From: Macrostomum lignano
Taxonomy: Eukaryota
Length of the DNA: 32,570 bases
Assembly (NCBI GenBank): GCA_002269645.1
Contig: NIVC01004536.1
Span: 1 to 32,570 of the forward strand
Reading direction: 5' to 3'
Made by a program: the position numbers and the translations under genes. Below the pieces are notes generated by a model that had not been told where the DNA came from, searched no databases, and was given only the letters and a program-made list of their open reading frames with translations. Positions 684 through 24,946 of this stretch are shown in pieces; position 1 is the stretch's first letter; each line of letters begins with the position of its first letter.

Positions 684-789
684 TTTCTGGATTCTTTTTG
701 GCTTCAGTTTAACCATTGTTAATTGCTTTTTAGCTTCAGTTTTAACTTGAACAAATTTTTGAAGCGTTAATATGACTAAATTTTCAAGG

Positions 790-2050
790 CACCTGTTAGA
801 CTGGTTTCGCTTGTTAGACACTGAATGTCACCTGTCAGAAACTGAGTGTCGCCTGTTAGACACTGTTAGACACTGGTCTCGCCTGTTAGACACTGGATGC
901 ACCTGTTAGACACTGAATGTCACCTGTTAGAAACTGAGTGTCGCCTGTTAGACACTGAATGCACCTGTTAGACACTGGGTGTCACCTGTTAGACAATAAA
1001 TGTCACCTGCTAGAAACTTGGTGTCGCCTGTTAGACACTGGGTGTCGCCTGTTAGACACTGAATGTCGCCTGTTAGACACTGGGTGTCACCTGTTAGACA
1101 CTGGGTGTCACCTGTTAGACACTGGATGCACCTGTTAGACACTGGGTGTCACCTGTTTGACAATAAATGTCACCTGCTAGAAACTTGGTGTCGCCTGTTA
1201 GACACTGGGTGTCACCTGTTAGACACTGGGTGTCGCCTGTTAGACACTGGGTGTCGCCTGTTAGACACTGGTGTCACCTGTTAGACACTGGGTGTCACCT
1301 GTTAGACACTGGGTGTCACCTGTTCGACACTGAGTGTCACCTGTTCGACACTGAGTGTCACCTGTTAGACACTGGGTGTCGCCTGTTAGACACTGGGTGT
1401 CGCCTGTTAGACACTGAATGTCACCTGTTAGACACTGAATTTCACCTGTTAGACACTGAATGTCACCTGTTAGACACTGAATTTCACCTGTTAGACACTG
1501 AATGTCACCTGTTAGAAACTGAGTGTCACCTGTTAGACACTGGGTGTCGCCTGTTAGACACTGAGTGTCGCCTGTTAGACACTGGGTGTCACCTGTAAGA
1601 CACTGAATGCACCTGTTAGACACTGGGTGTCACCTGTTAGACACTGGGTGTCGCCTGTTAGACACTGAGTGTCGCCTGTTAGACACTGAATGCACCTGTT
1701 AGACACTGGGTGTCACCTGTTAGACACTGGGTGTCGCCTGTTAGACACTGAGTGTCGCCTGTTAGACACTGAATGCACCTGTTAGACACTGGGTGTCACC
1801 TGTTAGACACTGGGTGTCGCCTGTTAGACACTGAGTGTCGCCTGTTAGACACTGAATGCACCTGTTAGACACTGGGTGTCACCTGTTAGACACTGGGTGT
1901 CGCCTGTTAGACACTGAGTGTCGCCTGTTAGACACTGAATGCACCTGTTAGACACTGGGTGTTACCTGTTAGACACTGGGTGTCGCCTGTTAGACACTGA
2001 ATGTCACCTGTTAGAAACTGGGTGTCGCCTGTTAGACACTGAATGTCACC
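790..2050. repeat. 21-bp minisatellite (CACCTGTTAGACACTGGGTGT and variants), ~60 units, containing an 83-bp higher-order repeat
   Basis: Direct tandem units; 4 identical 83-bp (21+21+21+20) blocks start at 1610, 1693, 1776 and 1859. Confidence 0.97.
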
Positions 2051-2553: not shown

Positions 2554-2728
2554 ATGGTTTTAGAGAATGTGAACATTATTGGACTGGTATCCGTGCTGCT
2601 GTTCTATCTGCTCATTCTAGCTGTGGGCATCTGGGCTGGACGAAGGAGCAAGAACCGCGGCGACAGCGAAGAGGTCATGGTGGCTGACAGGAGCATCGGG
2701 CTGACCGTGGGAATCTTCACGATGACTG
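2554..2728 (+). CDS. SLC5A7: SLC5A7 exon 1
   Basis: ATG 2554; [29 protein letters not shown]...GIFTMT; donor G|GTGAGT. Confidence 0.93.
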
Positions 2729-5700
2729 GTGAGTCACAGATCTACGAGGGGCGTCCGGAAAGTAGTGTTACTATTACTCGGTGTGGACGTATGGAAAGTT
2801 GCACTTGCATGAGTTTGGTGTCATTTGAAAGCGGCAAGTCTCTTCTTTAAAATGACACCAATTGCAAGAGATTTGAATATGTGCTTCAAGAGATATGGAC
2901 CAAGGGGCGCCAGCACCAAGGGGCGCCAGCACCAAGGGGCGCCAGCACCAAGGGGCGCCAGCACCAAGGGGCGCCAGCACCAAGGGGCGCCAGCACCAAG
3001 GGGCGCCAGCACCAAGGGGCGCCAGCACCAAGGGGCGCCAGCACAATTTCCTGTAAAAGTAGCTAGTAGTCCATACATATAAATAAGCCACTGATAATGA
3101 CAATTGCTCCACAACTTTCCCATTCCAACACGCACAGCCACCTGGGTTGGCGGAGGCTACATCAACGGCACGGCAGAGACGGTGTTCAACCCGGCCATCG
3201 GGCTGGTTGGTGCTCAGGCTCCGTTTGGCTACGCTTTCAGCCTGGTCTTCGGTTTGTAACAATTCTTGTAGATTTTGTGCGCACTATTTGCACCAACTAC
3301 TTAAAGTAGACTTTTGCGAGTAAAGTGCATAATTTATAAATTAATTAGACTAAATGATAAGTATATGACGCGCTTCTTTTAACTGAGTTGCTGGGCCAGC
3401 CTCCCAGATCCTCAGTTGCTGGGCCAGCCCTGTCAGATCCTCAGTTGCTGGGCCAGCCTCCCAGATCCTCAGTTGCTGGGCCAGCCTCCCAGATCCTCAG
3501 TTGCTGGGCCAGCCCTGTCAGATCCTCAGTTGCTGGGCCAGCCTCCCAGATCCTCAGTTGCTGGGCCAGCCTCCCAGATCCTCAGTTGCTGGGCCAGCCC
3601 TGTCAGATCCTCAGTTGCTGGGCCAGCCCTGTCAGATCCTCAGTTGCTGGGCCAGCCTCCCAGATCCTCAGTTGCTGGGCCAGCCTCCCAGATCCTCAGT
3701 TGCTGGGCCAGCCTCCCAGATCCTCAGTTGCTGGGCCAGCCCTGTCAGATCCTCAGTTGCTGGGCCAGCCTCCCAGATCCTCAGTTGCTGGGCCAGCCTC
3801 CCAGATCCTCAGTTGCTGGGCTAGCCTCCCAGATCCTCAGTTGCTGGGCCAGCCCTGTCAGATCCTCAGTTGCTGGGCCAGCCTCCCAGATCCTCAGTTG
3901 CTGGGCCAGCCTAGCAGATCCCCAGTTGCTGGGCCAGCCTAGCAGATCCTCAGTTGCTGGGCCAGCCTCCCAGATCTTCAGTTGCTGGGCCAGCCTCCCA
4001 GATCCTCAGCTTAATAATACCAGCCACAATCGCTCTCACACCTAGGCGGGCTGTTCTTCGCGAACCAGATGCGCACCAGGGGCTACGTGACCATGCTGGA
4101 CCCGTTCCAGTACAAGTACGGCGAGAGAATGTGCGGCCTGCTGTTTGTGCCGGCTCTGCTTGGCGAAGTTTTCTGGTCGGCTGCGATTCTGTCCGCACTG
4201 GGTGAGCCTCATTAATAGCGAGAGGTGCAAGGTGTATCTACCTACCTAAATGAGCATTGAGTTGTCAGGGCAGCCTACTATGTGAATTTTCAAAGGACAC
4301 GAGTGCCGGATAGAGAGGCTTCGCGGGCCGTCTGAGGCCCTTGTTTACATTCGAACTAGGCAAAAATCATGTGGCGACGCGAACGGTCCCAGAGTCGAAG
4401 TAAAACTTAGGCATCTCAATGAAGTGTCAATTAAATTTACATCTGACACTCCAGATTGCGGGTTTTATGCTTGATTCAGATGCAACTTTAACCATAACAG
4501 GAGATTAAAATTCGTTTCTGAATTTATTCAAAACGCAGGCGCCACACTCAAAGTGATACTAAACATGGACAACACTCACGCTGTGATTGTGTCAGCCTGC
4601 ATCGCACTCGGCTACACTCTGTTTGGAGGTCTCTACTCGGTGGCTTACACAGACGTTGTGCAGCTGTTCTGCATATTTATTGGACTGGTAAATGATTGCT
4701 TCGGCGTCTGCTTGACGTTTTACCTAAAGGTGTCACCTGGATGTGTCTCCAAGTGTGCCTGCAAGTGTGATTGCCTAAAGTGCGTCCTGCACGTGATACA
4801 TGATGTTTAACAGTTTAACCTTCACTGGGCAGCCTTGTGCAGAGCCTTCGATAACATCTTCCAGTGAATCCTGCTCATTCAGCTAACTCTTGAGAACATT
4901 TACAAGTGAGCCAGTGTCGTACACAGACACGCACTCATACACACGCTCACACAGGGTGTACAACGGGCCCTAATTGATTTTCTAATCGTCAGACATGTAT
5001 ACTCACTGCTGTGCCTTGGGGGTTGGCCCTCATGGTTGTGAATCACAGGACAACCCCCCAGAAATATTTTCTGGCACAAGCAAGACCCAAATGAATGTTG
5101 CCGCACACGGAATAAAACCAGGGGTACTAGTCAGATGCTTAAATTGAATAGAATGATACATTGAAAGCTTGCTGATTGAGAGCCAACCTATTCACACTTT
5201 ATCCTCATCAGTGGCTCTCCATTCCGTTCGCCATGATGAACCCGCTGGTGCAGCCCATCGCAACCACAGCGCTCACTCGGGTTGTGAACGGCACCGAACA
5301 GACCGGCTGGCTGGGCACCGTGGCACCTCAGGATGCCGCTTACTACGCCGATAATTTTTTGATGCTCACCTTTGGCGGCATACCCTGGCAGGTGTATTTT
5401 CAACGCGTTCTGTCGGCCAAGACGGCTCGAAATGCTCAGTTATTGTCGTACATTGCCGCCTTTGGATGCTTGGTGATGGCTCTGCCATCCGTTCTAATTG
5501 GAGCTGTGGCAGCTTCAACAGGTAAGAGAGCTCTCTCTGTGCCGCGCGCTGATGATTTCTCCACCACATCAAATATCACACTGACCCTGATGCAACGTCT
5601 TTTGACGCAGTCATACGCACAGGCACACACTCATACAGGAGTGTACAGCGGCCCTAACTTTATTCATCTTCGTAAATTGCACTAGCAGACCCGAGCCGAG

Positions 5701-6690
5701 ATTCCAATTTAGTCCGAAATTAACGTGACTGCACTTGGAATCGAGCCTGGGCCGCTGGCACATGGAGCACCGCACCAGACCACTAGGATACGTCCCCCCA
5801 ACAAATGCCCCTATTCCATCTTACAAACTGGTAACATGCGCATGGTACTGTTCATGTGATATCATTAGCCTTGTCCAACACATTCCCCTGCCCCACTGCC
5901 AGACTGGGAGAGCACAGCCTACTTCAACCTGACCCAGTCGACGCCATTTAGCAAAGACGACATGAAGCTGATTCTGCCGCTAGTCCTGCAGTACCTCTGC
6001 CCGCCGGCCGTCGCTTTTGTCGGCTTGGGCGTCGTCTCCGCCGCCGTGATGTCCTCAGCGGACAGCTCGATCCTCTCTGCCGCTTCCATGTTCGCTCGCA
6101 ATGTGATGAAGCCGATTTTTTGGCAGACGGCAACTGACCGCCACGTCATCTGGTCGATGCGGGCAGCCATTGTAGTTGTTGGCATCATTGCTTGCATCTT
6201 AGCCATCCAGATCTCGACAATCTACGGCTTGTGGTTCCTCTGTTCGGATCTTGTCTATGTAGTCCTGTTCCCGCAGCTGATCTCTGTTATCTACCTAGAC
6301 TGGTCCAACACGTACGGCAGTTTGGCCGGTTACGTCACCGGGATGTTTCTGAGAATATCGGCCGGCGAGGCGCTGATCTTCCTGCCCGCTCTGTTCCACT
6401 ATCCCGGCTTTGTTGACGGCAGCGAATTTTATCAACGATTTCCCGTTAAAACATTCAGCATGCTGGCTTCGTTGGCTTCGTCCGCTCTAGTGAGCTACAT
6501 GACTCACCGACTTTTCACTGAAGGAAAGCTGCCACCTGCTTGGGATGTTTTTCAATGCGTTGTCCCGAAGGAGACTCGAAGTGTCACCATCGCTGCTGCT
6601 GCTGAAGATGATGATGGATTGATGCTGCCACCAATGGTTCAGCCGAAGCCAGAGGCCAACGAGCCTGAGTTGCGATCTGATATTGATTAA
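2554..6690 (+). CDS. SLC5A7: High-affinity choline transporter (SLC5A7/CHT1/cho-1), 6 exons: 2554-2728, 3138-3251, 4046-4201, 4539-4687, 5212-5521, 5903-6690; 1692 nt = 563 aa + stop
   Basis: All five introns are GT-AG with compatible phases (1,1,1,0,1). The spliced protein has CHT1 motifs: [113 protein letters not shown]. Confidence 0.97.
2899..3042. repeat. 16-bp minisatellite (ACCAAGGGGCGCCAGC) x9 perfect, SLC5A7 intron 1
   Basis: 144 bp = 9 identical units. Confidence 0.97.
3138..3251 (+). CDS. SLC5A7: SLC5A7 exon 2
   Basis: Acceptor ACAG|CC; [38 protein letters not shown]; donor G|GTTTGT. Confidence 0.93.
3386..4009. repeat. 28/29-bp minisatellite (AGTTGCTGGGCCAGCCTCCCAGATCCTC / ...CCCTGTCAGATCCTC), ~22 units, SLC5A7 intron 2
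   Basis: Two interspersed unit variants, seen directly. Confidence 0.97.
4046..4201 (+). CDS. SLC5A7: SLC5A7 exon 3
   Basis: CTAG|GC; [52 protein letters not shown]; donor G|GTGAGC. Confidence 0.95.
4539..4687 (+). CDS. SLC5A7: SLC5A7 exon 4
   Basis: GCAG|GC; [11 protein letters not shown]...[21 protein letters not shown]; donor |GTAAAT. Confidence 0.95.
5212..5521 (+). CDS. SLC5A7: SLC5A7 exon 5
   Basis: TCAG|TGG; WLSIPFAM...[14 protein letters not shown]...GAVAAST; donor G|GTAAGA. Confidence 0.95.
5903..6690 (+). CDS. SLC5A7: SLC5A7 exon 6 (terminal)
   Basis: CCAG|AC; [10 protein letters not shown]...[14 protein letters not shown]...SDID*; TAA 6688-6690. Confidence 0.95.
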
Positions 6691-6786
6691 GCTTGGACAT
6701 CCGCGTTGTAGCGGGTTAGTACAGTCTACATATAGCTTGACAAAATTTATTGTTGTTTTAATACTAAAGTATTAAAGTAGTTTAGG

Positions 6787-6792
6787 AATAAA
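6787..6792 (+). terminator. Candidate polyadenylation signal AATAAA for SLC5A7
   Basis: First AATAAA, ~100 nt after the stop. Confidence 0.45.
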
Positions 6793-7610
6793 ACTTAAGG
6801 CTATCTATATGTATAGATAAAGCTACTTAAATATTTTTATAATTGGGTAGCTCATCCGTTAGCTGTAGATAAAAATGCACACGCTCCGGAAAACAAGAAA
6901 GTTGAATATTGTATTTGATTAATGCTATTTTCTCATTCGCAGTTATTCACAAAATTCGAGGTTGTTTTTTTTTTAATTTAAAAATTTAGATTTTTTTTTA
7001 ATCTGCTTGAAACATATACTGTCAAAGTATTATTGCTTTTCAATATCTAACTTTACATATTTTTGCTGTTATTTTTAATATAAATTTTGCGCTCATATTT
7101 GTGCATTGCATACTGTAGTATCAATGCCGATGCAAATGATAGTTATTCCGTTTCAAAAAGGTTGTAGAATCAATATTTAACTTTTTAATCAAGGATTTTG
7201 TTTAAAGTATTTTTTATTTGCTACCTCGCAAATCATCAGCAGTTTTATTCATTTTTAGTCAACTCGACGAAGGTTTTAGCTTGATGTTCATTTTTTTTAT
7301 AGCTCTTTCTGTAGTTTTTTTAACTTTTCGGCTGACACTTTTATGCTTTACGATAGTTTGTGTTCATTCTACTTTTGCGATTATTATAACATGAAATTTC
7401 ACTCAAATACACGTTGATTTTTACAGCACTCTTTGTTGAAGCGCTGCCCGAACTTAGAAGAGATGGGTTATCAAGCTTATTAAATAATAAAACTCATTCC
7501 ACACTTAGAATTAACTGACTATTAGCTGATTAACTTTAATTTTAATTTTTCGAGATTAACTACGATGGGAACAAGCCTACTACAACTATCGCCTGTTTTG
7601 GGCCTTCTAA

Positions 7611-7787
<177 letters not shown>

Positions 7788-8669
7788 CTGTTTTGGTGTT
7801 TTGTAGTTCTGATTCTCAGAAATTCTGTATTGTGTTTCTCAGCATGATCAGCTTCAGCGAATGCCTTTCTAAATAGAGCGTCTTTGTAAAATAATTTGAA
7901 CGGGCGAACAAGGAGTGTTTAACTATTTATAGGCTCCACCATACCGCTCACTGCCCAGTACACAAACCGACGTTGAAAAACATGAAGTGCAGTAGTTGAT
8001 TTTACCCTCATTGCCGTCAACCTTAATGAATTATTCATGAAGATCTTAAACCGCCTTAATTTTACTGGAATAACACTGCACGCGGTAAGTCCTTTATAAG
8101 AACGGCACGGTAAAGAGCTCCTCACATGGCATTCTCTGGCTGTGCGCCTACCAAAATGCCGGGGCCTCCGAACGACATGCTGACGGAGCTGCAGAACCGG
8201 CAGCGGGCCTACATTCAAAGCACTTGTGAGCCGCCATCGCCAACCCACGAGCCCGAACGTGACGTTGTTGAAGACTGCAACAACGGTTCTAGACAACGAC
8301 AGAATGCTAAAACGATGGTGACTGGTGAAGGTCAGTGTGAGTTGCCGATGCTCTTGTGGTTACACATGTAACATATGTACAGTATTCTTCGGTATCGACA
8401 AAAGGCAATTGCGGCTGTCAGCATGCTGGCGTATGTCACTTTACATGACAATAATTAAAGACTAGAACCCTACAGCAATCCGACATATCGATGTGACTAG
8501 CAAATTATTACTGTTACACTACAGCGACGTTCACCCGACGTCTACAATTACGATGACAAGGGTGTTCACAAACATCCTGGATGCCACTGCTGAACCAGGA
8601 ACTTCTCTTCCCGCGCTCGCCAGCACTTTAGCCTCTCTCTCTGCTCGTTCTCCTTTGCCGACTCGCCCG

Positions 8670-9066
8670 CCAGCACATCCGGCCTCCTCATTGCCTTCAA
8701 TACCACAACGGCTGGGAATCCACTTCAGGATGAATTGGTGAACAGTTTGGACCAGCTTCTTACTAAGCTCTTTACGGATTTTGCTACCTAACGGATTTCT
8801 ACCTCTGCCGCTGATCATATGCAGCCCGCTCTTGTTATCCATGTAAATTAGCGCCTTCTTCCAGGCGTGTTAGAGTCTCCAACCATCTGACCGCCTGAGA
8901 AGTGCGGAACGCAAAGTTCCGCATGAGAAGAAGACGCGAGTCTTCCGCCCGCCACTTTCCGCAGCTCGATCGGCCCTCTGCTGCTCTTTGATCTGCCCTG
9001 CACCACGCCACCTCCCCTACTGCCCGCCTTGTCTACAGAAGCAACCATCTGTGAGGATGGTCAAGT
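8670..9066 (-). mobile_element. Degenerate RNase H domain of a non-LTR retrotransposon
   Basis: The minus strand gives, across frameshifts and in the correct order, ILTDG..., SSSHAEL, IYMDNKSGL and FILKWIPSRCGIEGNEEAG. These match the D/E/D/D motifs of non-LTR RNase HI (IYTDGS, AEL, IxTDSxSAL, WIPSHxGIxGNExAD). Confidence 0.75.
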
Positions 9067-9194
9067 GCACGGGTATTAGACTTATTTCTATACTAGTGGT
9101 TCTTTGAAAAAAATATCATCACACGTAACTCTGAAATATCACCTAAAGATGCATCACTTGGAATTTGAGGAGTCTGAATTCGTGGATATGACTA

Positions 9195-11348
9195 ATGGAC
9201 TCCAAAAAACAGAACGTCGGTTTTGAAAAAAGAGCCCTAACTCAACAATTGAATCGAAGTTTAAGCTCAAGGTTGTATTTATTTAATTTTTCGTACATAA
9301 TACGATTCAAACACAATTCCAGCTCACCACAGCAGTACGTGCCGTATTTTGCTGAGCCAAATCTCAGCCCTGGGAGCTGTGGGTCTGACGATCAGCCTGA
9401 CCGGCCTCATCACCGTCTGCGTGGGATTCGCCTTGAGCAGATCCGCCATCGGCGAGTTCGTGCGACAGCATCAGGACCGACATGATGTCACGTTCGACAT
9501 GATGTGAGGCTGCAATGCGGTCTGTTAAATAACATAAGCAGTGTTTTGACTTCTTGGTCAGCTGAAGCAGGACCATTTTTGCAGGAAATTTTTAGGATTA
9601 GATTTTGAATAGCTCGCCTTCTGGATTGCCGAATTCTCGGAATCTGGCCTCTTTCAGATACTTTTTAAACAGCTAGGAAGGCAAGTAAACCTGATAAGTA
9701 ATCTCTTTTACCTACGCCAGGTGTCCCAATGTGACCAACAGTATCATAGGTATCGTTGTTGGAAGCTTCACGTACTCGGCGATCCACTTTCTAGTTAATT
9801 GCGTCACATCTACTGGCTTCGGCTTCGGCTGCCGAAAGCGAACACTCGTGGCTATTGTGAGTAGCTATTTTTGTTAAACAGCATCTCTTTAACACGTCTC
9901 AATGGCAAAGCCATTTAGCACGTCTTCCTGTCAAGGAATTTTTTTCGCACATTCACTTTCTGGAGCAACTGTGGCACAAAAGCGTTCTTCGTCTTTCCAA
10001 GTGCGCTCAGCAAACCGATGTCAGCGATGTCCGGTAAGAAATTTCGCACGGGAAGGTTCCAAAACGTTGTGTACTGTCCAAAGTATAGCTGAACTGCTCT
10101 GACCACTTCCAACAGGGGTCGGCATGCACACTCCGACCCGCGGATCACACATGCGGCCCGCGAAGCCTCTATCCGACCTTCGGGTCCGAGAAACTTCACG
10201 GGTAGTGTCTCTGTTAACTCTCTTTTTTATTCTATTCCCTCTCCTCTCTTTCTTCCTCTCCCTTCTCTCTTCCCTTCTCTCCACCCTCTTCTTCCACCTG
10301 CTCTATACCCTAATTCTTCCTTCTTTGCCTTTTTTTCCTCTATTCCCTCTCTTCTCTCTGGCCGGCAGTCATGCGCTAGATTATATACTTGTCCCTAAAG
10401 TCAAAACAGTTTGCTGACACCTGACTTAGAGCTTTTTTAATACTCGTAATTTCTGCTTATCTACATCATTACTTGAATTTCTTATGACTTGTCAAACCAA
10501 AACAAATCATTTTCGGCTCTTACAAAAGCAAACAGTAATCCTGACGTCGATAGAAGTCGCCGACGCACGTTGGATTGTTGCACAAGTAAGCAGTAAAACA
10601 GATTGCTAACAAGTCTGATCTCCTGACCCTCAACCGCAGTGGCTGACTCTGGACATATTCGTCACAGCTGGCTGGTATCTGCTATCCTGCCTGTCCTTCG
10701 TGCCCCTGTTCGCTCACCTGGCCTACTCCAGTCGATTAAAACGAGGCGTACATGACTTGGACCTGAATCATTACATCACCGCGTTGGTGGTAAATCCTAA
10801 CCTAATAGTTACAATGACAACAGGTGACGAAGCATCCGCCTTGAAGCCGGCTGTAAGGAAACAACGATTTCAACTTAAAAACCTTATAATAAAAAACCGA
10901 ATTGCATCATATATAAAAGTACGAGAAATCCTTTTCAGTCGTTCTCTACATTTTATCCAATATTAACGCTATACATTGGAAACTGCGTTGTGACAGCTAG
11001 TCTGGTAAACTCCATTAATTTATTGGATTTGACTTGTTATACAACAGCTTATAGTAGTCCTTTAGCTTCACTGATTAGCCAGTAGCTTCGCTTAATAGTA
11101 GCAAGTAGAGTGTAGTTTCATTAAATTTTAATTCAGTTTTAGCTAAAATAACGAACAAACAATTTTCGCTGCAGGTACTTCAAGCGAGTTGCCTTGCTGT
11201 AAATCTGGTTACAAACCAAATACTTCGTGGTAATCGGCAAGAAAAATCATCCAATAATCGACGAGATATACAAAGTCAGCCTGCTGTCACTGATCAATCG
11301 AGGCAAGTCGTTGCTATGAATACTACAGGCTGCATCTTGCCAAACTAA
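9195..11348 (+). CDS. Putative four-transmembrane protein (LAPTM/tetraspan-like topology), 5 exons: 9195-9271, 9333-9503, 9721-9856, 10640-10789, 11175-11348; ~235 aa; exon 1 is tentative
   Basis: Exons 2-5 join in frame at GT-AG sites (AT|GTGAGG..GCCAG|G; ATT|GTGAGT..CGCAG|TGG; GTG|GTAAAT..TGCAG|GTA), giving four hydrophobic segments, an NVT sequon in loop 1, a basic CRKR cytosolic loop, TAA at 11346-11348 and AATAAA at 11360-11365. The family call is inference. Confidence 0.7.
10220..10360. repeat. Pyrimidine-rich (C/T) low-complexity tract, intron 3 of the 4TM gene
   Basis: Seen directly. Confidence 0.7.
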
Positions 11349-11359
11349 ATTTGATCGAT

Positions 11360-11365
11360 AATAAA
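11360..11365 (+). terminator. Candidate polyadenylation signal of the 4TM gene
   Basis: AATAAA 12 nt after the predicted stop. Confidence 0.4.
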
Positions 11366-12029
11366 TACTTGAAACAAATACTTGAATTTACTTCAAACGT
11401 ATCCCTCCAAAGTATCTTTTTATCACACTTTGTTAATCACAATTTAATAGTGATTAGGTGAATAAGATAAACAGCCTACTTGAGTCAACAAATATACTCT
11501 GAAGTTGTTAAGCCGTTTATATACGAGAAGTAACATATTTCAAGGTAAAATAACATAACAGAATAAATTACAATGTCATATAGTTAATTACACAACCGAC
11601 TCTAAAATGATAGAGCCAACTCAATTAGAGATAAAAGCTCGTCGACAAATACGCACGAAACTAACAAAAGATTATTTACATTAATTAATTTCCAAGGCAA
11701 ACGCACTGTCGGGAACACATCAAGTTAGCAAACCTAGTCAAACACAGGCGCAAATAATCCATCAATTTATGAGTTAGCCAATAGCACTACATGTAAATGG
11801 GATTGCCATTCAATTATCGGGTATTTCCTATTCCCCGATAGCAAATAACGATGATTGCTGCCCATGAACACTGCTTAGTTTGGACTATATGCAATCATAA
11901 AACGCATACCGGATGCAATATTGTCAGCTTCAATACATCCATTGTAGCATTCAGAGACTACATGTACATATAACAGCATCGCAGATGCGTATTAGTCGAA
12001 TTAGAAGCATCTAAGTCGAATCTTTCGCG

Positions 12030-13358
12030 ATGGCTGTCGAAAGCATGAAGCTACTTGCAATATTGCTTCTGTTCTGTTCGATCCTCGCAACGGAATGCAT
12101 CGCCAAGCGGAGAGACTATCAAGCCGAGCTGTTCAAATACTTGAAGAACAACATTACTGACTACAGTCCGAAACTGCGACCTACGCTCGACCCAGACCAG
12201 GAGGTGGAAGTACACGTCATCGCCTCGCCAAGAATGATTGTATCCGTGGACAGCGCCAAGCAGAGCATGACAATAGCTGGCATGTTTTTTGCCAGCTGGT
12301 ACGAGGAGCGACTGGTCTGGGACCCCCAGCTGTTCGGAAATGTCACAATGATGGACTGGGACAGCAACCAGCTCTGGCTCCCGGTCATAATCGTCTACAA
12401 CGGCATGGGAGACAATCAACTACTCAGTCCTCAGTTTCCGCCGTACATCACTTCCGTGCAGTCCAATTTGTCTGTGGTATCGACAACCTGGAGACAGGAG
12501 TGGGAGTTCTCTTGCGAGTTTAATATGACCCGCTTCCCTCTGGACCGTCACATCTGCGACATGGAGCTGTTCATGAATGCCCGCGCATTGGACAAAATCG
12601 TCCCGAGAAAAGGCTTATTATTGGCAAACTCATCGTTTGAATACAACGAAGGCGCGGCTTTTGCTCGTAACAGCGAATGGCGGGTGCTGAACCTCAGCAC
12701 ATTCATACGGTACAACGACTTCAAAATGTTCGAAAATCTGCCGCCAGTGAAAATGCCGACCTTTGTGATGCGACTGGAGATCGAGCGAGTGTCCACTTAC
12801 TACATGCTCAACGTGGTGGCTCCCCTAATGCTGCTCACGCTGCTCCAGGTGCTCGTCTTCTTCGTGCCAGTCGAGTCTGGAGAGAAGCTGGGCTTCGGCA
12901 TCACCATCACGCTGAGCTACACGGTGTTCCTGCTGCTGCTGGACGGCCTGCTGCCCAAGTCGCAGTCGATGCCGGCCGTGGCGTCGTTCATCACGGCGGC
13001 CATGGTGCTGTCGACGTCGTCTCTGCTGCTGACGTCGGTGGCGATTCGGTTCCACTTCGCTGCGGAGTCTCAGCCGATGCCGTCGTGTCTCCGGGTCGTG
13101 TTCGTGAGCTGCCTGGGCCGCGTGATGCTGTGCGGTGAGAGGCGAGGCGGCAGCAGGACGGCACCGGAGGGAGACCTCGATGATTCTGCTGTGAACAAAC
13201 CGAGCCGTGACGATGTTAGGAACGGAGATACGTCCGGAGAGCCGAGGCGCTCGGAGTGGCAGGTTGCAGAGGTCGCCGTGGAGCGGCTGCTGATCCTCCT
13301 AGGCTGTCCGGTCACTTTGGCCATCACGTTTTGTTTCCTTATTTTTCCGTTTCTTTGA
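12030..13358 (+). CDS. Cys-loop ligand-gated ion channel subunit A1 (nAChR-like, non-alpha), intronless, intact 442 aa
   Basis: Signal peptide; LRP, WxExRLxW, WLPVIIVYNG; Cys-loop CEFNMTRFPLDRHIC (C-X13-C, 12513-12557); M1-M2 linker PVESGEK; M2 LGFGITITLSYTVFLLL; M3; WQVAEVAVERL plus M4; no vicinal Cys in loop C. Confidence 0.95.
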   Translation: MAVESMKLLAILLLFCSILATECIAKRRDYQAELFKYLKNNITDYSPKLRPTLDPDQEVEVHVIASPRMIVSVDSAKQSMTIAGMFFASWYEERLVWDPQLFGNVTMMDWDSNQLWLPVIIVYNGMGDNQLLSPQFPPYITSVQSNLSVVSTTWRQEWEFSCEFNMTRFPLDRHICDMELFMNARALDKIVPRKGLLLANSSFEYNEGAAFARNSEWRVLNLSTFIRYNDFKMFENLPPVKMPTFVMRLEIERVSTYYMLNVVAPLMLLTLLQVLVFFVPVESGEKLGFGITITLSYTVFLLLLDGLLPKSQSMPAVASFITAAMVLSTSSLLLTSVAIRFHFAAESQPMPSCLRVVFVSCLGRVMLCGERRGGSRTAPEGDLDDSAVNKPSRDDVRNGDTSGEPRRSEWQVAEVAVERLLILLGCPVTLAITFCFLIFPFL

Positions 13359-13488
13359 AAAAACATTCGGTGGCACCTTCACGGAGATGGGTTTTCTGAT
13401 GGGTTAAAAATTCTCGTGTCTGACGAGAGTTTCGATATCTAAGCACCAAATTAACTTTAAAGATGATACGAAAACATTTTAATAGTAT

Positions 13489-13494
13489 AATAAA
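13489..13494 (+). terminator. Candidate polyadenylation signal for A1 (paralog at 26657-26662)
   Basis: AATAAA ~130 nt after the stop, kept in both copies. Confidence 0.4.
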
Positions 13495-13831
13495 GTCGGT
13501 TACTAATATATAGTTGCACTGAGTGAGGTGAAGAGTAAGTATCACGCTTCGACGTCACTAGTAAATTTTTTGGCGAACTGAATGTATACATGTATGCGGA
13601 CACTGTACTAAAAAATTATAATTACTCTTTTCTACGTCAAGTTTTTCTTTGGTAAGACCCTCTTGGCACAGCGCAAAAAGCTTAAAAAGATCAGAATAAA
13701 CAACTTTTCTATGCATTGCCGCTATCCAATAAGATTCTTTTAAAGTTTTTGATTGAAGATTGTCAAAAAACGCATGCTGCTTCAGGTGTTATTTATAATA
13801 TAAAGTAGTACAATCATATAATGATAGATAA

Positions 13832-14106
13832 CACCTGCCCTAATGGGCAGATTTGCAACCGACAGCTCAGCCGCAGCTATTGCGTGTCGCATCTGAAGGC
13901 TGCGTACGGCTGTTCAGTCCGAGGACTGGGGGGGGGGTTCATACACACCCTCAATTACCCCCAGCTAATGCTGGTACAAATTTTACAGCTGGGTGAACCG
14001 AAGCGTGTCAGTGTCTTGCTCGAGGACACAAATTGTTCCAAGAGGGTCGAGAATCGAACCCCCGACCTTCAGTCGTGAGTCCGACGCTCTGAACCACTAG
14101 GCTGAG
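13832..14106 (-). mobile_element. tRNA-derived SINE (copy 1) with a CORE-like central segment
   Basis: Minus strand: A-box-like AGCCTAGTGGTT, B-box GGTTCGATTCTC, then TGTGTCCTCGAGCAAGACACT...CACCCAGCTGTAAAAT resembling CORE-type SINE domains; no 5' acceptor stem. Confidence 0.75.
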
Positions 14107-15054
14107 ATTTAACTACATCCAATCAATAAGATCCAGTTACAGATGACGCAAGTGCAGGAATAGGTTCCGTGGGAATCGTGGCTCAGTAATTGCAAGTCTG
14201 AAAACGGCGCAGTAATTATTTATGCGAAACATTTTTGAAGGGACTGCGTTTGCGGAAAACTCTATTCGAATGAGATCACGCATGGGTTTCATCATAATAT
14301 TCATACCTTGGTTCATCTCATATACATTGTGGAAAAATATTGGCAATATTCGCGTCGACGGCATATTGGTAATATTCTAAGTTACGCGTCCTAAAGCGCG
14401 TCTGCTGCCCCTTGAGGATCAAGGGAAAGACTGAGCACTACCGTGACTTATTGATATGTAATGTTTAAGGGTCTTTGACCTTAACTATGTATATAAGCTA
14501 GGACACAATGGATCAATGGTACAAGCTAAAATTAAATTGGGCATTAGTTATTATTATACGCTATCGTATCTCAGATGAATCACGTGTAAGTTCTTAGTTT
14601 GCGGCCGATTAGAAACTTATAGCTACATTTAGTCATTCTACATTAGATGTCCACACGCTCCTCGAGCGAGCTTTATCCAGAGGCAAAGATCAGCAGAGGA
14701 GCTGCGTAGAATCCGCAAATATCAGTCATACCTGGCAAAGTCAATTTAGAAAATGAATCGCAAATAATACTAATTTTCTGATGAGACGAAAGTCACACAA
14801 TGAGATATACCTGGCTCAGTGCTGCATCAGATTAATTACGGGATACTCAGTGACTGCAATTCACAGATGCTCGTAGCAACTAAATAGGCAGACTATGCAA
14901 ACTTCAGAATTTGATAGCCTACTGCAGTGTCAACATGTAAAACGCATTTACGCTTGTATAGCTCAAAGGCTCGGGTTCAATAGGATCTGGGGATTTTATT
15001 GTCCAAGCTTAGCACGCTGCTCATCATTGAGACGGCTAACTCAACTACATCCAC

Positions 15055-16353
15055 GTGCCACAGTTCAGCCTTACCCGCTTCTGTTTGGTCTTCAGCGCCA
15101 TCGCTAGTGTTCAGGTGGCTCAGGCTAGAGACTTTGAAGCGGAATTGCTCGATTACTTGAAGACTAACAACTCTCGGTATAGCCGTACGCTCAGGCCGAA
15201 ACTAGATCCACATCAGGAGGAGCTCGGTGCTTGTCTGCTGAAAATTCTGGACGTAGACAGCGCCAAGCAGAGCGTCACCATAGCCGCAACTGTCTACGCG
15301 ATGTGGTTTGATGAACGCCTCGTCTGGGACCCGACCCAGTTTGGGAACATCACAATATTGGAATGGGACAACCAGAAAATCTGGTTTCCTCCAATCGTTA
15401 TTCTGAATGGTCTCGGCGACAATCAGCTGCTGAAGCCGGAGTTTCCATCATTTTTGGCCTCGATGTCATCGAACAAGACATTGGTGTCGACTATTTGGCG
15501 ACCAGATTTCGAGTTCACCTGCCAATTAAGCATGTACCGATTTCCAATGGATCGACACGTATGCAGTTTTAGTTTGTATATGGAGGACCAGGCTCAGCTA
15601 TACAAAAGTATAGTTCCAAGCAAGAAATTTTTGTGGAATGCGGAGAATGAGCAAGATGTGGAGTTAAATGAACTCGGTGCGCATAAAAACAGCAGCGAGT
15701 GGCGACTGCTAAGTTTGAGTACTTCGGTAGAATATGGACTTGTCAACTTTTTTAAGAATTCACCACTGATGCTAATACCAGCCTACAATATGCAAATGGA
15801 AATCGAGCGAGTGTCCACTTACTACATGCTCAACGTGGTGACTCCACTACTGCTGCTCACGCTGCTCCAAGTGCTTGTCTTCTTCGTGCCAGTCGAGTCT
15901 GGAGAGAAGCTGGGCTTCGGCATCACCATCATGCTGAGCTACACGGTGTTCCTGCTGCTGCTGGACGGCCTGCTGCCCAAGTCGCAGTCGATGCCGGCCG
16001 TGGCGTCGTTCATCACGGCGGCCATGGTGCTGTCGACGTCTTCTCTGCTGCTGACGTCGGTGTCGATTCGGTTCCACTTTGCTGCGGAGTCTCAGCCGAT
16101 GCCGTCGTGTCTCCGGGTCGTGTTCGTGAGCTGCCTGGGCCGCGTGATGCTGTGCGGTGAGCGGCGAGGCGGCAGCAGGACGGCGCCGGAGGGAGACGCC
16201 GATGACTCCGTGGTGAGCAAGGCGAGCGACGTCGGTGAAAGGCGCTCGGAGTGGCAGGTCGCAGCGGTCGCCGTGGAGCGGCTGATGATTTTCTTGGGCT
16301 GTCCTGCCGCAGTGGCCATTGTGGTTGCATTTGTCATTGTTCCATCCTGTTAA
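15055..16353 (+). CDS. Cys-loop channel subunit B1, intronless, open frame but GTG in place of ATG and a net 3-codon deletion in the N-terminal domain (possible pseudogene)
   Basis: Cys-loop CQLSMYRFPMDRHVC, PVESGEK, 4 TM; B2 has ATG at the same position; in-frame TAA at 15037-15039 excludes an upstream ATG. Confidence 0.85.
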   Translation: MPQFSLTRFCLVFSAIASVQVAQARDFEAELLDYLKTNNSRYSRTLRPKLDPHQEELGACLLKILDVDSAKQSVTIAATVYAMWFDERLVWDPTQFGNITILEWDNQKIWFPPIVILNGLGDNQLLKPEFPSFLASMSSNKTLVSTIWRPDFEFTCQLSMYRFPMDRHVCSFSLYMEDQAQLYKSIVPSKKFLWNAENEQDVELNELGAHKNSSEWRLLSLSTSVEYGLVNFFKNSPLMLIPAYNMQMEIERVSTYYMLNVVTPLLLLTLLQVLVFFVPVESGEKLGFGITIMLSYTVFLLLLDGLLPKSQSMPAVASFITAAMVLSTSSLLLTSVSIRFHFAAESQPMPSCLRVVFVSCLGRVMLCGERRGGSRTAPEGDADDSVVSKASDVGERRSEWQVAAVAVERLMIFLGCPAAVAIVVAFVIVPSC

Positions 16354-16901
16354 TTTTACTCGGCTAGACAAAAAATCGAAGCACAGTGATAGAGCGCTCT
16401 GTAGTAATATGAACTTATTAAACGTAATTTAAAAAAGCAGTCTCTTTTGTCTAATAGTTATTCTCTTTTACGTTCTCTAAGAAATGCCTCGCTGCTGAAG
16501 CCTTGGGGTCCAAAATTAAAGGTCACATTTGCTTAAACTATTTACACTAATGGGCAATGCTTAAAATACAAAATCCAACTTTAAAATCGAAGTGGTGTCA
16601 ATCGTTCTAAATACACAAATTTTATTCTTTTTGTGAATCTTTGTGGACTAATTTCTTTCTTAACCTTTTCTGCAACAAAGGGCATGATACTCCAAAACTG
16701 AGTCTATTTTGTACCTTATGTATGGAAAAGCTTTCACACAGAACTTACGGATTCAGAACGGTGAGTTGTATACAACTGTCACAACTTGAGACATCGCAAA
16801 ATCTGAAGCGATCGCTGAGTTGACTTCTGCAACTTTAACTTTTCGACTGCACCTTCGACTGCACCCGCATACTGCCGTCCAGGGCCATGAAAGGCACAGA
16901 G

Positions 16902-17280
16902 TGAGGACCAAGGGTTTATTAGGCTGAGGACCATGTGTTCATTGGGCTGAAGACCATGGGTTCATTGGGCTGAGGACCACGTGTTCATTGGGCTGAAGAC
17001 CAAGGGTTCATAGGGCTGAAGACTATGGGTTCATTGGGCTGAAGACCATGGGTACATTGGGCTGAGGACCACGTGTTCATTGGGCTGAGGACCATGGGTA
17101 CATTGGGCTGAGGACCACGTGTTCATTGGGCTGAGGACCATGGGTACATTGGGCTGAGGACCACGTGTTCATTGGGCTGAGGACCATGGGTACATTGGGC
17201 TGAGGACCACGTGTTCATTGGGCTGAAGACCAAGGGTTCACTGGTTTGAGGACCATGACTTCATGAGAACTGAGGACCAA
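16902..17280. repeat. 23-bp minisatellite, alternating GGGCTGAGGACCATGGGTACATT / GGGCTGAGGACCACGTGTTCATT (46-bp dimer)
   Basis: Strict alternation over ~17036-17220. Confidence 0.95.
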
Positions 17281-18009: not shown

Positions 18010-19790
18010 GCTCTTTGCCGCCTCTCCTTTGATATCAATTACCGGAGGAGGGGCACAGAGGAAGGCATTCATGCCTTCAAAAGGAGTACAGGGTGGAGCG
18101 CCCATAGTCATGCGTCAGGCTCTGCCCTGGATTTTGTAGAGATTACCGAAATTCCAAAATTGCCGAAAGTGGGCTAGATGACCGCTAGCCCACACGAGGC
18201 TGGCGTAACAGATTGAGGTGCGCATAATGGCAGTGTAAATCCACCACAGTTTTCTGGGGGTGAGCCCTAGGTGGTTCCTACGGCGCGCCTGATCTGAGCC
18301 AGGACAGCCAGGGCTTTTTTGGCTTTGGTTTGGATGTGCGGAGTCCAGTTAAGCCTGTGGTCCAGAGTGAGGCCCAGGCCGCGGACGTGCTTCTCCATGG
18401 AAATATCCTTTCCATAGAGGGCGAGGGGCTTAATGGTCCAGAGCAGTTTGTTGGTAAACATGACCGCTGTGGTTTTCGACTCTGAGAGTCTAAGGCCACA
18501 TTGGTTTGCCCAACGCTCCGCTCGTCCCAGAAAGCCCTGCAGAAGATCTCTGAGGTATCAAACGAGGGACCCTCGCATATGGTGGTCACATTATAGGCAT
18601 AGCCCACCTTGAGAATGGTGTCATGGAGATCACTGCAAAGCAACTCATCCATGCGTCCTTTCTGGACAGGCGCCGTTAGAGAGCTGCTGTTCAGGTGGAC
18701 CACGACAGTGCGGTTCCGGATCATGAACATGATCCACCGGACAAGGGGAGGGTGCGTGGCCCTGGAGTCCAGGGCTCTGCAAAAGGCCTCGAAGATGACA
18801 TTGTCAAAGGCCCCCTCAATCTCCAGGAAAAGCGAGAGGGCAAAGCCGCTGCCAAGAACGGCCCTCTTCAGGAAGTCAACGATGACATGGAGGGCACTCT
18901 CAGTGGACCTGCCCGCGCGGAAGGCGTGCTGGTTCTGCGAGAGTGGGAAGCGCTTTAGCTCGATTGAAAGTAAGCGCCAAAGCACCAGTCTTTCGAGGAG
19001 CTTAAGGCAGAAGGAGGTAAGGCTGATAGGCCTGAAGGCCTTCACCTATTCGTAGTCGCAATATCCAGGCTTGGGGATAAAGACCACCCGGGCCTCTTTC
19101 CACGCAACTGGTACATAGCCCAGCTCCACACAAGCTCGGAGGAGACGACAGAGCAGGTCCAGGAAGCGGTGGTTTTTCACTGCCTCGTGCAAGAACGCTT
19201 AGTAGATGCCATCGGGCCCAGGCGCCTTGAACGGGTTGAAGGACCTTGTCGCTCTAGCAATGCGGTCTTTGGTGATCATAGACTTTGCTTGGCCTTGCCC
19301 TCCCACGGTGTGGTCAGGCGGGCCCTGCTGAGTCGGAGATTTAGGGAAGAAACTGTTGAGCATGAGCTCTAGAGTCTCTTCAGAGCTCTCTGTGACCGAG
19401 CCATCAGGTCTCTTCACAACAGAGAGTTTAGAAAAACGGTCGTTCGTGAGTGCCTTTACCACGTGGGCTACGGGGCGAGAGCCCTCAAGCCCTTCGCAAT
19501 ATTGGCGTCACTTGGCCGCCTTGGCCCTTCTGACTTGGCCCTTAAACTCGTGGATAGCACGGGTATAGGCCTCTCTATCAGATGGGTCTTTGGTTTTGAA
19601 CGCTCGTCTTTGGAGGGTCCTGGCTCGGCGCCGAAGGCTCTGGGTTTCACCAGGGAGCAGATTTCTTGCCTTTGAAGGCCTTAAGAGGGCAGGCTGCCTC
19701 ATAGGCAGTGGTGATCGCCCCGTCCAGGGGGGAGGCGTGATCATCCACAACCCGGCAGTCAGAGAGGTCACTGGGGACTGCTAGATCGGA
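18010..19790 (-). mobile_element. Degenerate non-LTR retrotransposon ORF2 relic (LOA/R1-like reverse transcriptase)
   Basis: FNPFKAPGPDGIY, WKEARVVFIPKPG, FRPISLTSFCLKLLERL, QHAFRAGRSTESALH, LFLEIEGAFDNV, YADD decayed to YAYN, KAKKALAVLAQIRRAVG, LWWIYTAIMR, TPFEGMNAFL; stops and frameshifts; clade call from motif style only. Confidence 0.92.
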
Positions 19791-21601: not shown

Positions 21602-21749
21602 ACTTAGAAAGAATTAGAAATTAAAGAATACGTAAAATACGCATTTAGAGAGATTTAGAGTTATATAGCGACAGGTACAGGGAGGCAGATAAACATGTTC
21701 CAGGTCCTCTCTAACCCTGTGTGCAACCCACCCAAACCTACATTTACAG

Positions 21750-23836: not shown

Positions 23837-23837
23837 T

Positions 23838-24510
23838 ATTGCTAAAAACTTTGCTTTCCTGACCCTCAACCGCAGTGGCTGACTCTGGACATATTCGTCA
23901 CAGCTGGCTGGTCCCTGCCATCCTGCGATTCTGCCAGAAAGTCGGATTTTAGCCATAAGCGATAGTGTATTCAGTACACCCCTGTACGCCAATTAGCACT
24001 GCGCCTTAGTGCAGCCTTTTCAAGCCTCCAAATTTCATCAGCACGTCGATCACACGCGGCTGCATCAGCTCTGACTTCTTTAGTCACTGGCCTTCATCCA
24101 GGCGGAGCTTCTGAACCTTCAACAGGTGGCACCAGGTGAGTTTGAGAAGTTGCACAACAAAAAGTTAGCCCGTGCTCTTGAATTTCGTGTGCCTGCGTTG
24201 ATCCGTTCAAGCGCATTAAAAAATTGTCAGAGGGGGGGTAAATTCCCCCCTTGGTAGTTCTACTGATAATAGTAGCAAGTAGAGTGTAGTCTCATTAAAT
24301 TTTAATTCAGTTTTAGCTAAGCAACGACCAAACAATTTTCGCAGAGTACTTCAAGCGAGTTGCCTTGCTGTAAAGCTGTTTACAAACCAAATACTTCGTG
24401 GTGATCGGCAAGAAAAATCATCCAATAATCGACGAGATAAACAAAATCAACCTGCTGTCACTGAATAATCGAGGCAAGTCGTTGCTATGGATACAACAGA
24501 ATGCATCTTA
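23838..24510 (+). pseudogene. Relic of the 4TM gene: intron-3 acceptor plus the start of exon 4 (23857-23926) and decayed exon 5
   Basis: 67/70 identity to 10621-10690; exon-5 homolog has an altered acceptor and premature TAA at 24466-24468; exons 1-3 absent. Confidence 0.75.
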
Positions 24511-24946
24511 GGACAGGATGCATATTTAGAACAAATTACTTGAATCGACTTCAAATGTATCACTGCAAAGTAATTTTTTATCAAACTTTGGTAATCACGA
24601 TTTATAGTACCGCATAAACAGCCTACTTGAGTCAACAAATATACTCTGAAGCTTTTAAGCCGTTTATATGCGAGAGGAAACATATTTCGAGGTAAAATAA
24701 CAAAACAGAATAAATTACAATGTCATATAGTTAATTACACAACCGACTCTAAAAATGATAGAGCCAAGTCAATTAGACATGAAAGCTCGTTGAAAAATAC
24801 GCACGAAACTAATAAAAAGATTATTTACATTAATTAATTTCCAAGGCAAACGCACTGTCAGGACAAATCAACCTACGAGTAATCAAACACAGACGCAAAT
24901 GATCCATCAATTTATGAGTTAGCCAATAGCACTAAATGGGATGGCG

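What the first reader, a model, noticed from the sequence alone, without database searches (positions are those of the whole stretch)
9195..11365. Hidden five-exon four-TM protein gene, invisible in the ORF track, ending ~680 bp upstream of receptor A1
Seen: four short exons splice in frame to ...STCRILLSQISALGAVGLTISLTGLITVCVGFAL-SRSAIGEFVRQHQDRHDVTFDMMCPNVTNS-IIGIVVGSFTYSAIHFLVNCVTSTGFGFG-CRKR-TLVAIWLTLDIFVTAGWYLLSCLSFVPLFAHL-AYSSRLKRGVHDLDLN-HYITALVVLQASCLAVNLVTNQIL-RGNRQEK...GCILPN*. Splice phases match at three successive junctions and an AATAAA follows the stop. The G-x-x-x-RKR-x-L-x-x-W pattern at TM2-TM3 recalls LAPTM/DUF4728-type tetraspans (inference). Established: small multi-pass proteins such as NACHO/TMEM35A act as nAChR assembly factors. 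A role as an accessory subunit of the neighbouring channels is speculation. The first exon is ambiguous (alternative ATG upstream near 9149 with acceptor 9322).
Basis: partly seen in the sequence, partly recalled or inferred. Interest (0 to 1): 0.7.

Follow-up and report, generated by a model that had tools for sequence, protein, structure and literature searches.

The report
Real flatworm four-pass membrane gene, remodelled
The spliced gene is real and encodes a four-pass membrane protein whose only detectable relatives are two uncharacterised proteins of the flatworm Macrostomum lignano.

Summary
They have GT/AG borders and compatible phases. A TAA stop lies at 11346-11348 and an AATAAA at 11360.

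An exhaustive search of 1.84 billion proteins found one credible relative, Macrostomum lignano A0A1I8JDR4. A profile search added A0A1I8I957 (290 aa). The alignment runs colinearly across junctions 9503/9721 and 9856/10640, so the gene is real.

The homolog also exposed a missed 66-nt exon (10939-11004) that encodes the conserved start of the fourth membrane helix. The revised 324-aa product aligns almost end to end with the homolog (E = 8e-31).

No Pfam, PDB or fold match was found. The LAPTM/DUF4728 resemblance is not supported.

The gene lies between a CHT1 choline-transporter ortholog and a tandem cluster of nAChR-like genes. A truncated, stop-containing fragment of it was copied along with one receptor pair. 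One M. lignano receptor array has no such gene within the 8-10 kb of flank held.

Verdict: an ordinary but genuine gene of an uncharacterised family known so far only from this window and M. lignano. The accessory-subunit idea remains speculation.

The parts
8126..8330 (+). Probable first coding exon. It starts at the first in-frame ATG (8126) and ends at donor AAG|gtcagt in phase 1. An alternative donor is 8336, AGT|gtgagt. It encodes about 68 hydrophilic N-terminal residues.
   Evidence: The phase fits acceptor 9322. The best six-frame local alignment of the M. lignano N-terminus within 6700-9322 falls here (8192-8308, score 37, shuffle p about 0.085). Codon-usage score is highest in this frame, +0.33 bits per codon. 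Adding it lengthens the BLASTP alignment to P0007 residues 6-278 and raises the score from 98 to 105 bits. Probable, not proven.
9057..9072 (+). Alternative short first exon (ATG GTC AAG TGC ACG G, giving MVKCT-). Donor CGG|gtatta, phase 1.
   Evidence: Phase-compatible with acceptor 9322. The donor is weaker and there is no homology support. Kept as a rival to 8126-8330.
9323..9503 (+). It encodes TM1 and the conserved loop motif G-x-F-VRQHQ-x3-DVTFD-M.
   Evidence: Acceptor ttccag|, donor GAT|gtgagg. tblastn of P0003 and P0007 hits it at E about 1e-6. Codon usage is best in this frame.
9721..9856 (+). Exon 3. It encodes the end of loop 1 (with an N-V-T sequon), TM2 and the basic TM2-TM3 loop (CRKR).
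   Evidence: Acceptor cgccag|, donor ATT|gtgagt. The homology to P0007 runs ungapped across both of its junctions.
10640..10852 (+). Exon 4. It encodes TM3 and the start of loop 3 (DLDLNHY). Both are phase 0.
   Evidence: tblastn of P0007 hits 10634-10777 at E = 1.7e-6. The 10852 donor leaves 26 residues between HY and SF, the same number as in P0007, and gives the higher BLASTP score (98.2 against 94.0 bits, 6 against 27 gap columns). The choice of donor is unresolved.
10939..11004 (+). It encodes SFSTFYPILTLYIGNCVVTASL, the conserved start of TM4. Acceptor ttttcag|, donor CTG|gtaaac, phase 0/0.
   Evidence: It aligns to P0007 227-249 (SFPMFYPSLALFIGVCLIEISLM) with a score of 64. The shuffle null has mean 30.8, sd 4.1 and maximum 53, with 0 of 300 shuffles reaching 64. 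tblastn gives E = 0.007.
11175..11348 (+). It encodes the rest of TM4 and a basic tail, and ends in TAA at 11346-11348.
Evidence: Acceptor ctgcag|, phase 0. It supplies the basic cytoplasmic tail also seen in P0007. There is no significant homology and codon usage is poor.
11360..11365 (+). AATAAA polyadenylation-type signal, 12 nt after the stop.
   Evidence: Read directly from the sequence.
23844..23926 (+). Dead partial copy: the last 32 nt of intron 3 and the first 51 nt of exon 4. It lies immediately after a retrotransposon ORF.
   Evidence: tblastn finds 88% identity over 17 aa. See also the alignment. Homology to copy 1 stops after 23926.
24267..24519 (+). Dead partial copy of the last intron's 3' end and the last exon. 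The acceptor is altered by a 2-nt deletion, codon 41 is an in-frame TAA, and the normal stop is lost.
   Evidence: There are 9 non-synonymous and 3 synonymous codon differences from copy 1. Exons 1-3 and the 66-nt exon have no counterpart in copy 2.

Best explanation
This is a genuine spliced protein-coding gene of a flatworm-like eukaryote. It has at least six coding exons:
- 8126-8330 (probable)
- 9323-9503
- 9721-9856
- 10640-10852 (or -10789)
- 10939-11004
- 11175-11348

It encodes a membrane protein of about 324 aa with four transmembrane helices. The detectable family consists only of this protein and two uncharacterised Macrostomum lignano proteins, A0A1I8I957 and A0A1I8JDR4.

Inferred topology: both ends lie in the cytoplasm. 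The TM2-TM3 loop and the C-terminal tail are basic, and loops 1 and 3 are neutral to acidic.

The most conserved part is the exit of TM1 and the first outward-facing loop, G-F-x-L-x-R-x3-G-x-[FY]-VRQHQ-x(3,4)-DVTFD-x-M-x-P. I take this to be the working surface.

The protein has no catalytic or pore signature. The mechanism I commit to, with low confidence, is a non-enzymatic tetraspan that acts by binding partner proteins in or at the membrane through loop 1. The partner is unknown.

Its position between CHT1 and the nAChR-like cluster is most likely plain neighbourhood. The second partial copy is a by-product of the duplication of a receptor pair whose breakpoint fell in intron 3.
For: Shown:
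- Exon borders and phases.
- An exhaustive phmmer search gave one credible hit, P0003 at E = 4.4e-7. The other two hits are repetitive proteins.
- A profile search added P0007. Both are M. lignano proteins.
- The revised 324-aa model against P0007 gives E = 8e-31 and 105 bits, aligning residues 23-306 with 6-278.
- The missed exon is found by homology.
- Codon usage favours the proposed frame for exons 1-4.
- Both proteins have four hydrophobic segments at equivalent positions, a basic TM2-TM3 loop (3 K+R in 16 residues, and 5 in 22) and a basic tail.
- AlphaFold places four long helices on these segments, at low confidence.
- Copy 2 is truncated and carries a stop.

Inferred:
- The topology, from the positive-inside rule.
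- The scaffold or partner-binding role, from the absence of any enzymatic or channel signature and from where the conservation lies.
Against: - There is no transcript evidence.
- The first exon and the exon 4 donor are not settled.
- The last exon has no homology support and poor codon usage.
- The homologs are themselves computer-predicted proteins, and one (P0003) looks mis-predicted at its 3' end.
- The structure model is poor (pLDDT 47.8), so the fold is not established.
- Function is not addressed by any experiment or by any characterised relative.
Confidence: 0.8

Rival explanations
1. The protein is an auxiliary subunit or assembly factor for the neighbouring nAChR-like Cys-loop channels. 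By analogy with NACHO, TARPs or LHFPL4, it would bind them in the membrane and control folding, trafficking or gating.
For: It lies 681 bp upstream of receptor A1 on the same strand. The neighbourhood is cholinergic, with a CHT1 ortholog upstream and nAChR-like genes downstream. Four-pass proteins are a common type of channel auxiliary subunit (established knowledge).
Against: There is no similarity to any known auxiliary protein or chaperone family in Pfam or PDB. The duplicated receptor pair A2-B2 took along only a dead 3' fragment. The M. lignano tandem array of the closest receptor relatives has no homolog within the 8-10 kb of flank held. Gene adjacency in animals rarely implies shared function.
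Confidence: 0.07
2. The 66-nt exon 10939-11004 would then be skipped or be an alternative cassette, and TM4 would be formed by ITALV + VLQASCLAVNLV.
For: Donor 10789 and acceptor 11174 are both phase 0, and the 66-nt exon is a multiple of three. Skipping therefore keeps the frame and still gives a moderately hydrophobic fourth segment.
Against: The skipped exon carries the only part of TM4 that is conserved with M. lignano. Including it raises the alignment score from 82.8 to 94-105 bits.
Confidence: 0.12
3. The locus is not a working gene. It would be a decaying or unexpressed relic whose open frames persist by chance or because the inactivation is recent.
For: The second copy in the same window is clearly dead. 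The last two exons have codon usage no better than introns. There is no expression evidence.
Against: Six exons remain open with intact GT/AG sites. The 31-35% identity to a protein of another species is spread over exons 1 to 5. Such conservation at that distance is not expected without selection.
Confidence: 0.05

Closest known systems
Macrostomum lignano predicted proteins A0A1I8I957 (290 aa, named 'DUF1206 domain-containing protein' by UniProt) and A0A1I8JDR4 (201 aa, 'Transmembrane protein')
   Same: True sequence homologs, with 31-35% identity nearly end to end. They share the four hydrophobic segments, the basic TM2-TM3 loop and tail, and the VRQHQ...DVTFD loop-1 motif.
   Different: They come from a different species and are uncharacterised. 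The N-terminus is more acidic. The A0A1I8I957 tail ends in -TQL, which has the form of a PDZ-binding end (my own knowledge). The window protein ends in -LPN. The DUF1206 label is not reproduced with current Pfam.
Four-pass auxiliary proteins and chaperones of ligand-gated channels (NACHO/TMEM35A for nAChRs, TARP/claudin-like gamma subunits for AMPA receptors, LHFPL4/GARLH for GABA-A receptors)
   Same: Size class, four membrane helices, and probably both ends in the cytoplasm. The gene lies next to channel genes.
   Different: No sequence or profile similarity. Loop 1 lacks the claudin W-GLW-C-C signature and has no conserved cysteine. No functional or co-expression data exist.
LAPTM / DUF4728 tetraspans
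   Same: Only the count of four helices and a basic TM2-TM3 loop.
   Different: No Pfam hit for the window protein at E <= 1 or for its homologs at E <= 10. The RKR-x-L-x2-W pattern is not kept in the M. lignano homolog.

Membership tests
Uncharacterised macrostomid tetraspan family (A0A1I8I957 / A0A1I8JDR4) | Significant full-length sequence similarity | tested here: met
   phmmer gives E = 4.4e-7 against 1.84 billion proteins. BLASTP of the revised model against P0007 gives E = 8e-31, aligning residues 23-306 with 6-278.
Uncharacterised macrostomid tetraspan family (A0A1I8I957 / A0A1I8JDR4) | Four hydrophobic segments at equivalent positions, and the loop-1 motif VRQHQ-x(3,4)-DVTFD-x-M-x-P | tested here: met
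   Alignment A4 and the hydropathy and loop-charge comparison.
LAPTM (Pfam Mtp) / DUF4728 | Match to the family profile HMM | tested here: not met
   No hit for the window protein at E <= 1 or for the two homologs at E <= 10.
NACHO / TMEM35A (DoxX-like) | Match to the family profile HMM | tested here: not met
   No such family appears among the Pfam hits.
Claudin / PMP22 / TARP superfamily | Profile match, and the W-GLW-C-C signature with a disulfide in extracellular loop 1 | tested here: not met
   No Pfam hit and no PDB hit with the profile. Loop 1 (SRSAIGEFVRQHQDRHDVTFDMMCPNVTNS) has one non-conserved Cys and no Trp.
Tetraspanin (PF00335) | Large second loop with a CCG motif and conserved cysteines | tested here: not met
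   No Pfam hit. Loop 3 of the revised model contains no cysteine.
Myelin PLP / M6 | Match to PF01275 above the gathering score | tested here: not met
   Only P0003 gives 13.8 bits against a cut-off of 23.8. The window protein and P0007 give none.
DUF1206 (UniProt's label for A0A1I8I957) | Match to PF06724 | tested here: not met
   Not listed for P0007 even at E <= 10.
Channel auxiliary subunit (functional class) | Physical association with the channel, or an effect on it | not testable with these tools
   This needs co-expression, co-purification or knock-down experiments.

The most novel reading that the evidence does not exclude
A flatworm-specific tetraspan has been recruited as a dedicated auxiliary subunit or chaperone of a lineage-specific, intronless, tandemly expanded clade of nAChR-like channels. 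It would sit in a small cholinergic gene neighbourhood (CHT1, tetraspan, receptors). That would be a new, independently evolved class of Cys-loop receptor accessory protein.
Probability: 0.07. Interest if true: 0.7.

Novelty: new member of a known kind. Interest (0 to 1): 0.3.

Why it matters
As it stands, this corrects a gene model and records a second species for a small orphan family of four-pass membrane proteins. That is useful for annotating macrostomid flatworm genomes but is not surprising.

It would matter more if expression or co-expression experiments tied the protein to the adjacent nAChR-like channels or to cholinergic terminals. Accessory proteins often decide whether invertebrate Cys-loop receptors can be expressed heterologously at all.

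Tried and rejected
- Pfam on the core and on both homologs: only sub-threshold, mutually inconsistent hits (DUF6056, Neurensin, TctB, DUF4064, Myelin_PLP).
- PDB profile search: only a designed protein, matching the low-complexity N-terminus, and noise.
- AlphaFold2 on the 3-sequence alignment: pLDDT 47.8.
- Foldseek against PDB with that model: best E = 0.02 and TM-scores of 0.1-0.26, mostly long-helix axonemal proteins. This is meaningless.
- JGI metagenome scan with the two motif peptides: 217 pattern matches, none confirmed.
- Exact-sequence look-ups of receptor A1, P0001, P0002, P0003 and P0007: not on record, so the genomic context of the M. lignano homolog could not be seen.
- Literature search for the two UniProt accessions, and for intronless tandem nicotinic receptors in flatworms: nothing relevant.
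- Rfam and tRNA scans of the window: nothing.
- Read-through of the 66-nt exon to the stop near 11083, instead of splicing to 11175. Considered and ranked lower because it gives no basic tail and no AATAAA, although its BLAST score is about equal (103 against 105 bits).
- A donor at 10823 (CAG|gtgacg). Rejected because its phase 1 is incompatible with acceptors 10938 and 11174.

Full report
**1. What is in the sequence**

The window is eukaryotic, with spliced genes, retrotransposon fragments and many minisatellites.

| Exon | Acceptor | Donor |
|---|---|---|
| 9323-9503 | ttccag\| | GAT\|gtgagg |
| 9721-9856 | cgccag\| | ATT\|gtgagt |
| 10640-10789 | ccgcag\| | GTG\|gtaaat |
| 11175-11348 | ctgcag\| | (stop TAA 11346-11348) |

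- The phases fit: 2+1, 0+0 and 0+0.
- AATAAA follows at 11360.
- The ATG of the first nAChR-like ORF (12030) lies 681 bp further on.
- The joined 212-aa core has four hydrophobic stretches.

**2. Is it more than chance?**

- Pfam gave nothing above threshold, and the word-indexed search of 5.8 billion proteins gave nothing.
- The exhaustive phmmer search of 1.84 billion representatives gave three hits. Two are repetitive junk. One, P0003, is credible at E = 4.4e-7.
- P0003 is UniRef A0A1I8JDR4, a 'Transmembrane protein' of the free-living flatworm Macrostomum lignano.
- A profile of query plus P0003 retrieved a second, longer M. lignano protein, P0007 = A0A1I8I957, 290 aa.
It has no gap at the positions of junctions 9503/9721 and 9856/10640.
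- Colinear conservation across two splice junctions in another species is strong evidence that the gene and these junctions are real.
- The closest relatives of the neighbouring receptors are also M. lignano proteins, at 45-46% identity. The window therefore probably comes from a relative of Macrostomum that is not itself in the databases.

**3. Correcting the model**

- I aligned the C-terminal 90 residues of P0007 to the three forward frames of 10780-12030.
- Window 10939-11007 encodes SFSTFYPILTLYIGNCVVTASLV, which aligns with SFPMFYPSLALFIGVCLIEISLM. The score is 64. The shuffle null has mean 30.8 and maximum 53, and 0 of 300 shuffles reached 64. tblastn independently reports the hit at E = 0.007.
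- The segment is bounded by ttttcag| at 10938 and CTG|gtaaac at 11004/11005.

*The exon 4 donor.* Exon 4 can end at 10789 or, still in frame and still phase 0, at 10852 (GCT|gtaagg).
- The longer version leaves 26 residues between HY and SF, the same number as in P0007.
- It also gives the better alignment: 98.2 against 94.0 bits, with 6 against 27 gap columns.

*The first exon.* Exon 2 has no ATG before TM1 and an in-frame stop at 9298, so the start must lie in an upstream exon ending in phase 1.
- A 16-nt exon at 9057-9072 (MVKCT) is possible.
- The best candidate is 8126-8330 (donor AAG|gtcagt; 8336 AGT|gtgagt is an alternative).
- The best six-frame match of the M. lignano N-terminus anywhere in 6700-9322 lies there (p about 0.085).
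- Codon usage is best in that frame.
- With this exon the BLASTP alignment to P0007 becomes nearly end to end: residues 23-306 against 6-278, E = 8e-31, 105 bits.

*The last exon.* Exon 11175-11348 is the weak point. Its similarity to the P0007 tail is not significant and its codon usage is intron-like. In its favour, it continues TM4, supplies a basic tail like that of P0007 and is followed by AATAAA.

*Best model* (324 aa): MAFSGCAPTK...MVTGE-A-HHSSTCRILL...FDM-M-CPNV...LVAI-WLTLD...ALKPA-SFSTFYP...TASL-VLQASC...GCILPN.

**4. The protein**

- Both the window protein and P0007 show four hydrophobic segments at matching positions.
- Both have a short basic TM2-TM3 loop and a basic C-tail. Loops 1 and 3 are neutral to acidic.
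- By the positive-inside rule this gives both ends in the cytoplasm (inference).
- Conservation peaks at the end of TM1 and in loop 1: GF-x-L-x-R-x3-G-x-[FY]-VRQHQ-x(3,4)-DVTFD-x-M-x-P.
- Other invariant positions are an H-x2-VN in TM2, F-x-PL at the end of TM3, DL-x-HY in loop 3 and FYP-x-L-x-L-x-IG-x-C in TM4.
- There is no conserved cysteine pair, no CCG motif and no claudin signature.
- Pfam on all three proteins gives only inconsistent sub-threshold hits. These include none to LAPTM, DUF4728, DoxX/TMEM35, claudin or tetraspanin, and none to the DUF1206 named by UniProt.
- A profile search of PDB sequences is empty.
- AlphaFold2 with the three-sequence alignment puts long helices on the four segments, but at pLDDT 47.8. 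The Foldseek search with it is meaningless.
- The fold is therefore 'four predicted membrane helices' and no more.

**5. Context**

- Upstream (2554-6690, + strand) is a multi-exon ortholog of the high-affinity choline transporter CHT1/SLC5A7. Its last exon matches PDB 8j74 at E = 2e-66.
- Downstream are intronless nAChR-like Cys-loop genes: A1 (12030-13358), B1 (15055-16353), A2 (25199-), B2 (28178-29477) and C (31578-).
- A block of about 6.5 kb (10604-17163) is duplicated at 23844-30296.
- The breakpoint of that duplication lies in intron 3 of the tetraspan gene. Copy 2 therefore holds only 51 nt of exon 4 and the last exon.
- In copy 2 the acceptor carries a 2-nt deletion, there is an in-frame TAA, and 9 non-synonymous changes stand against 3 synonymous ones. 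It is a dead fragment.
- The duplicated receptor genes A2 and B2 also change frame.
- In M. lignano, the locus of the closest receptor relative (L001) is likewise a tandem array of intronless receptor genes. It has no tetraspan homolog and no CHT1 within the 21 kb held, which gives about 8 kb upstream of the first receptor gene.
- The genomic place of the M. lignano tetraspan itself could not be retrieved.

**6. Interpretation**

*Shown:*
- A real, conserved, spliced gene for a four-helix membrane protein.
- A family restricted, as far as a 1.84-billion-protein search can see, to this animal and M. lignano.

*Inferred:*
- The topology.
- Loop 1 as the functional surface.
- A non-enzymatic, partner-binding role.

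The accessory-subunit hypothesis rests on adjacency alone. It is weakened by the dead duplicate, by the tetraspan-free M. lignano array and by the lack of similarity to any known auxiliary protein. I give it about 7%.

The cholinergic flavour of the neighbourhood (CHT1, tetraspan, receptors) is worth recording, but it is a single observation.

**7. Verdict**

- The finding is a new member of an uncharacterised, already predicted family, with a corrected gene model.
- It is of modest interest unless expression or co-expression data link it to the channels.

Noticed in passing
window 2554-6690 (+): A multi-exon ortholog of the high-affinity choline transporter CHT1/SLC5A7. ORF pieces lie at 2554-2850, 4553-4810, 5176-5685 and 5962-6690. 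The last piece matches human CHT1 (PDB 8j74) at E = 2e-66. Minisatellites lie in its first introns (2899-3044, 3383-4009). The tetraspan gene thus sits between a choline transporter and ACh-receptor-like genes.
   Followed up: partly
window 10604-17163 and 23844-30296: A segmental duplication of about 6.5 kb carries the 3' part of the tetraspan gene plus the receptor pair A-B. Identity is 94% over 11818-17163 and 86% over 11093-11817. The second block looks decayed. A2 changes frame near 26392-26434 and so loses its last helix from the ORF. B2 is spread over three frames (28178-28402, 28396-28962, 28992-29429). Assembly indel errors cannot be excluded.
   Followed up: partly
window 12768-13205, 15790-16227, 25937-26374, 28921-29351, 32323-32570: The transmembrane half of receptor paralogs A, B and C is 92-95% identical at the DNA level. 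Over their whole length A and B are only about 62% identical in protein. The ligand-binding half of C is about 74% identical in DNA to that of A. This pattern suggests gene conversion, or a shared recently swapped module, confined to the pore-forming half.
   Followed up: no
window 31578-32570: Receptor C changes reading frame at about 32375-32378, at the boundary between the ligand-binding and membrane halves. B2 changes frame at the same boundary (28962-28992), which is also where the homogenised segment begins. This could be a frameshift, a tiny intron or an assembly error.
   Followed up: no
window 18278-19771 (-) and 22778-23862 (+): Two fragments of non-LTR retrotransposon reverse transcriptase, seen as ORF translations with RT-like motifs including a YADD box in 22778-23266. 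They fill the space between the two receptor blocks. The second ends exactly where the dead tetraspan copy begins. They were not checked against Pfam.
   Followed up: no
window 786-2050, 3383-4009, 7600-7800, 16900-17280, 21216-21605, 30035-30244: Long minisatellite or microsatellite arrays, including a GTN codon-like run that reads as poly-Val in ORF 7565-7876. A CT-rich low-complexity stretch lies in intron 3 of the tetraspan gene (10210-10350).
   Followed up: no
L001 (M. lignano NIVC01000059.1, 185128-206432) 7953-9161, 10001-11305, 12879-14096, 16369-16671: The closest receptor relatives in M. lignano are also intronless and arranged head to tail in a tandem array on one strand, followed by a GIPC1-like gene. 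The tandem intronless organisation of this receptor clade is therefore shared between the two species.
   Followed up: partly
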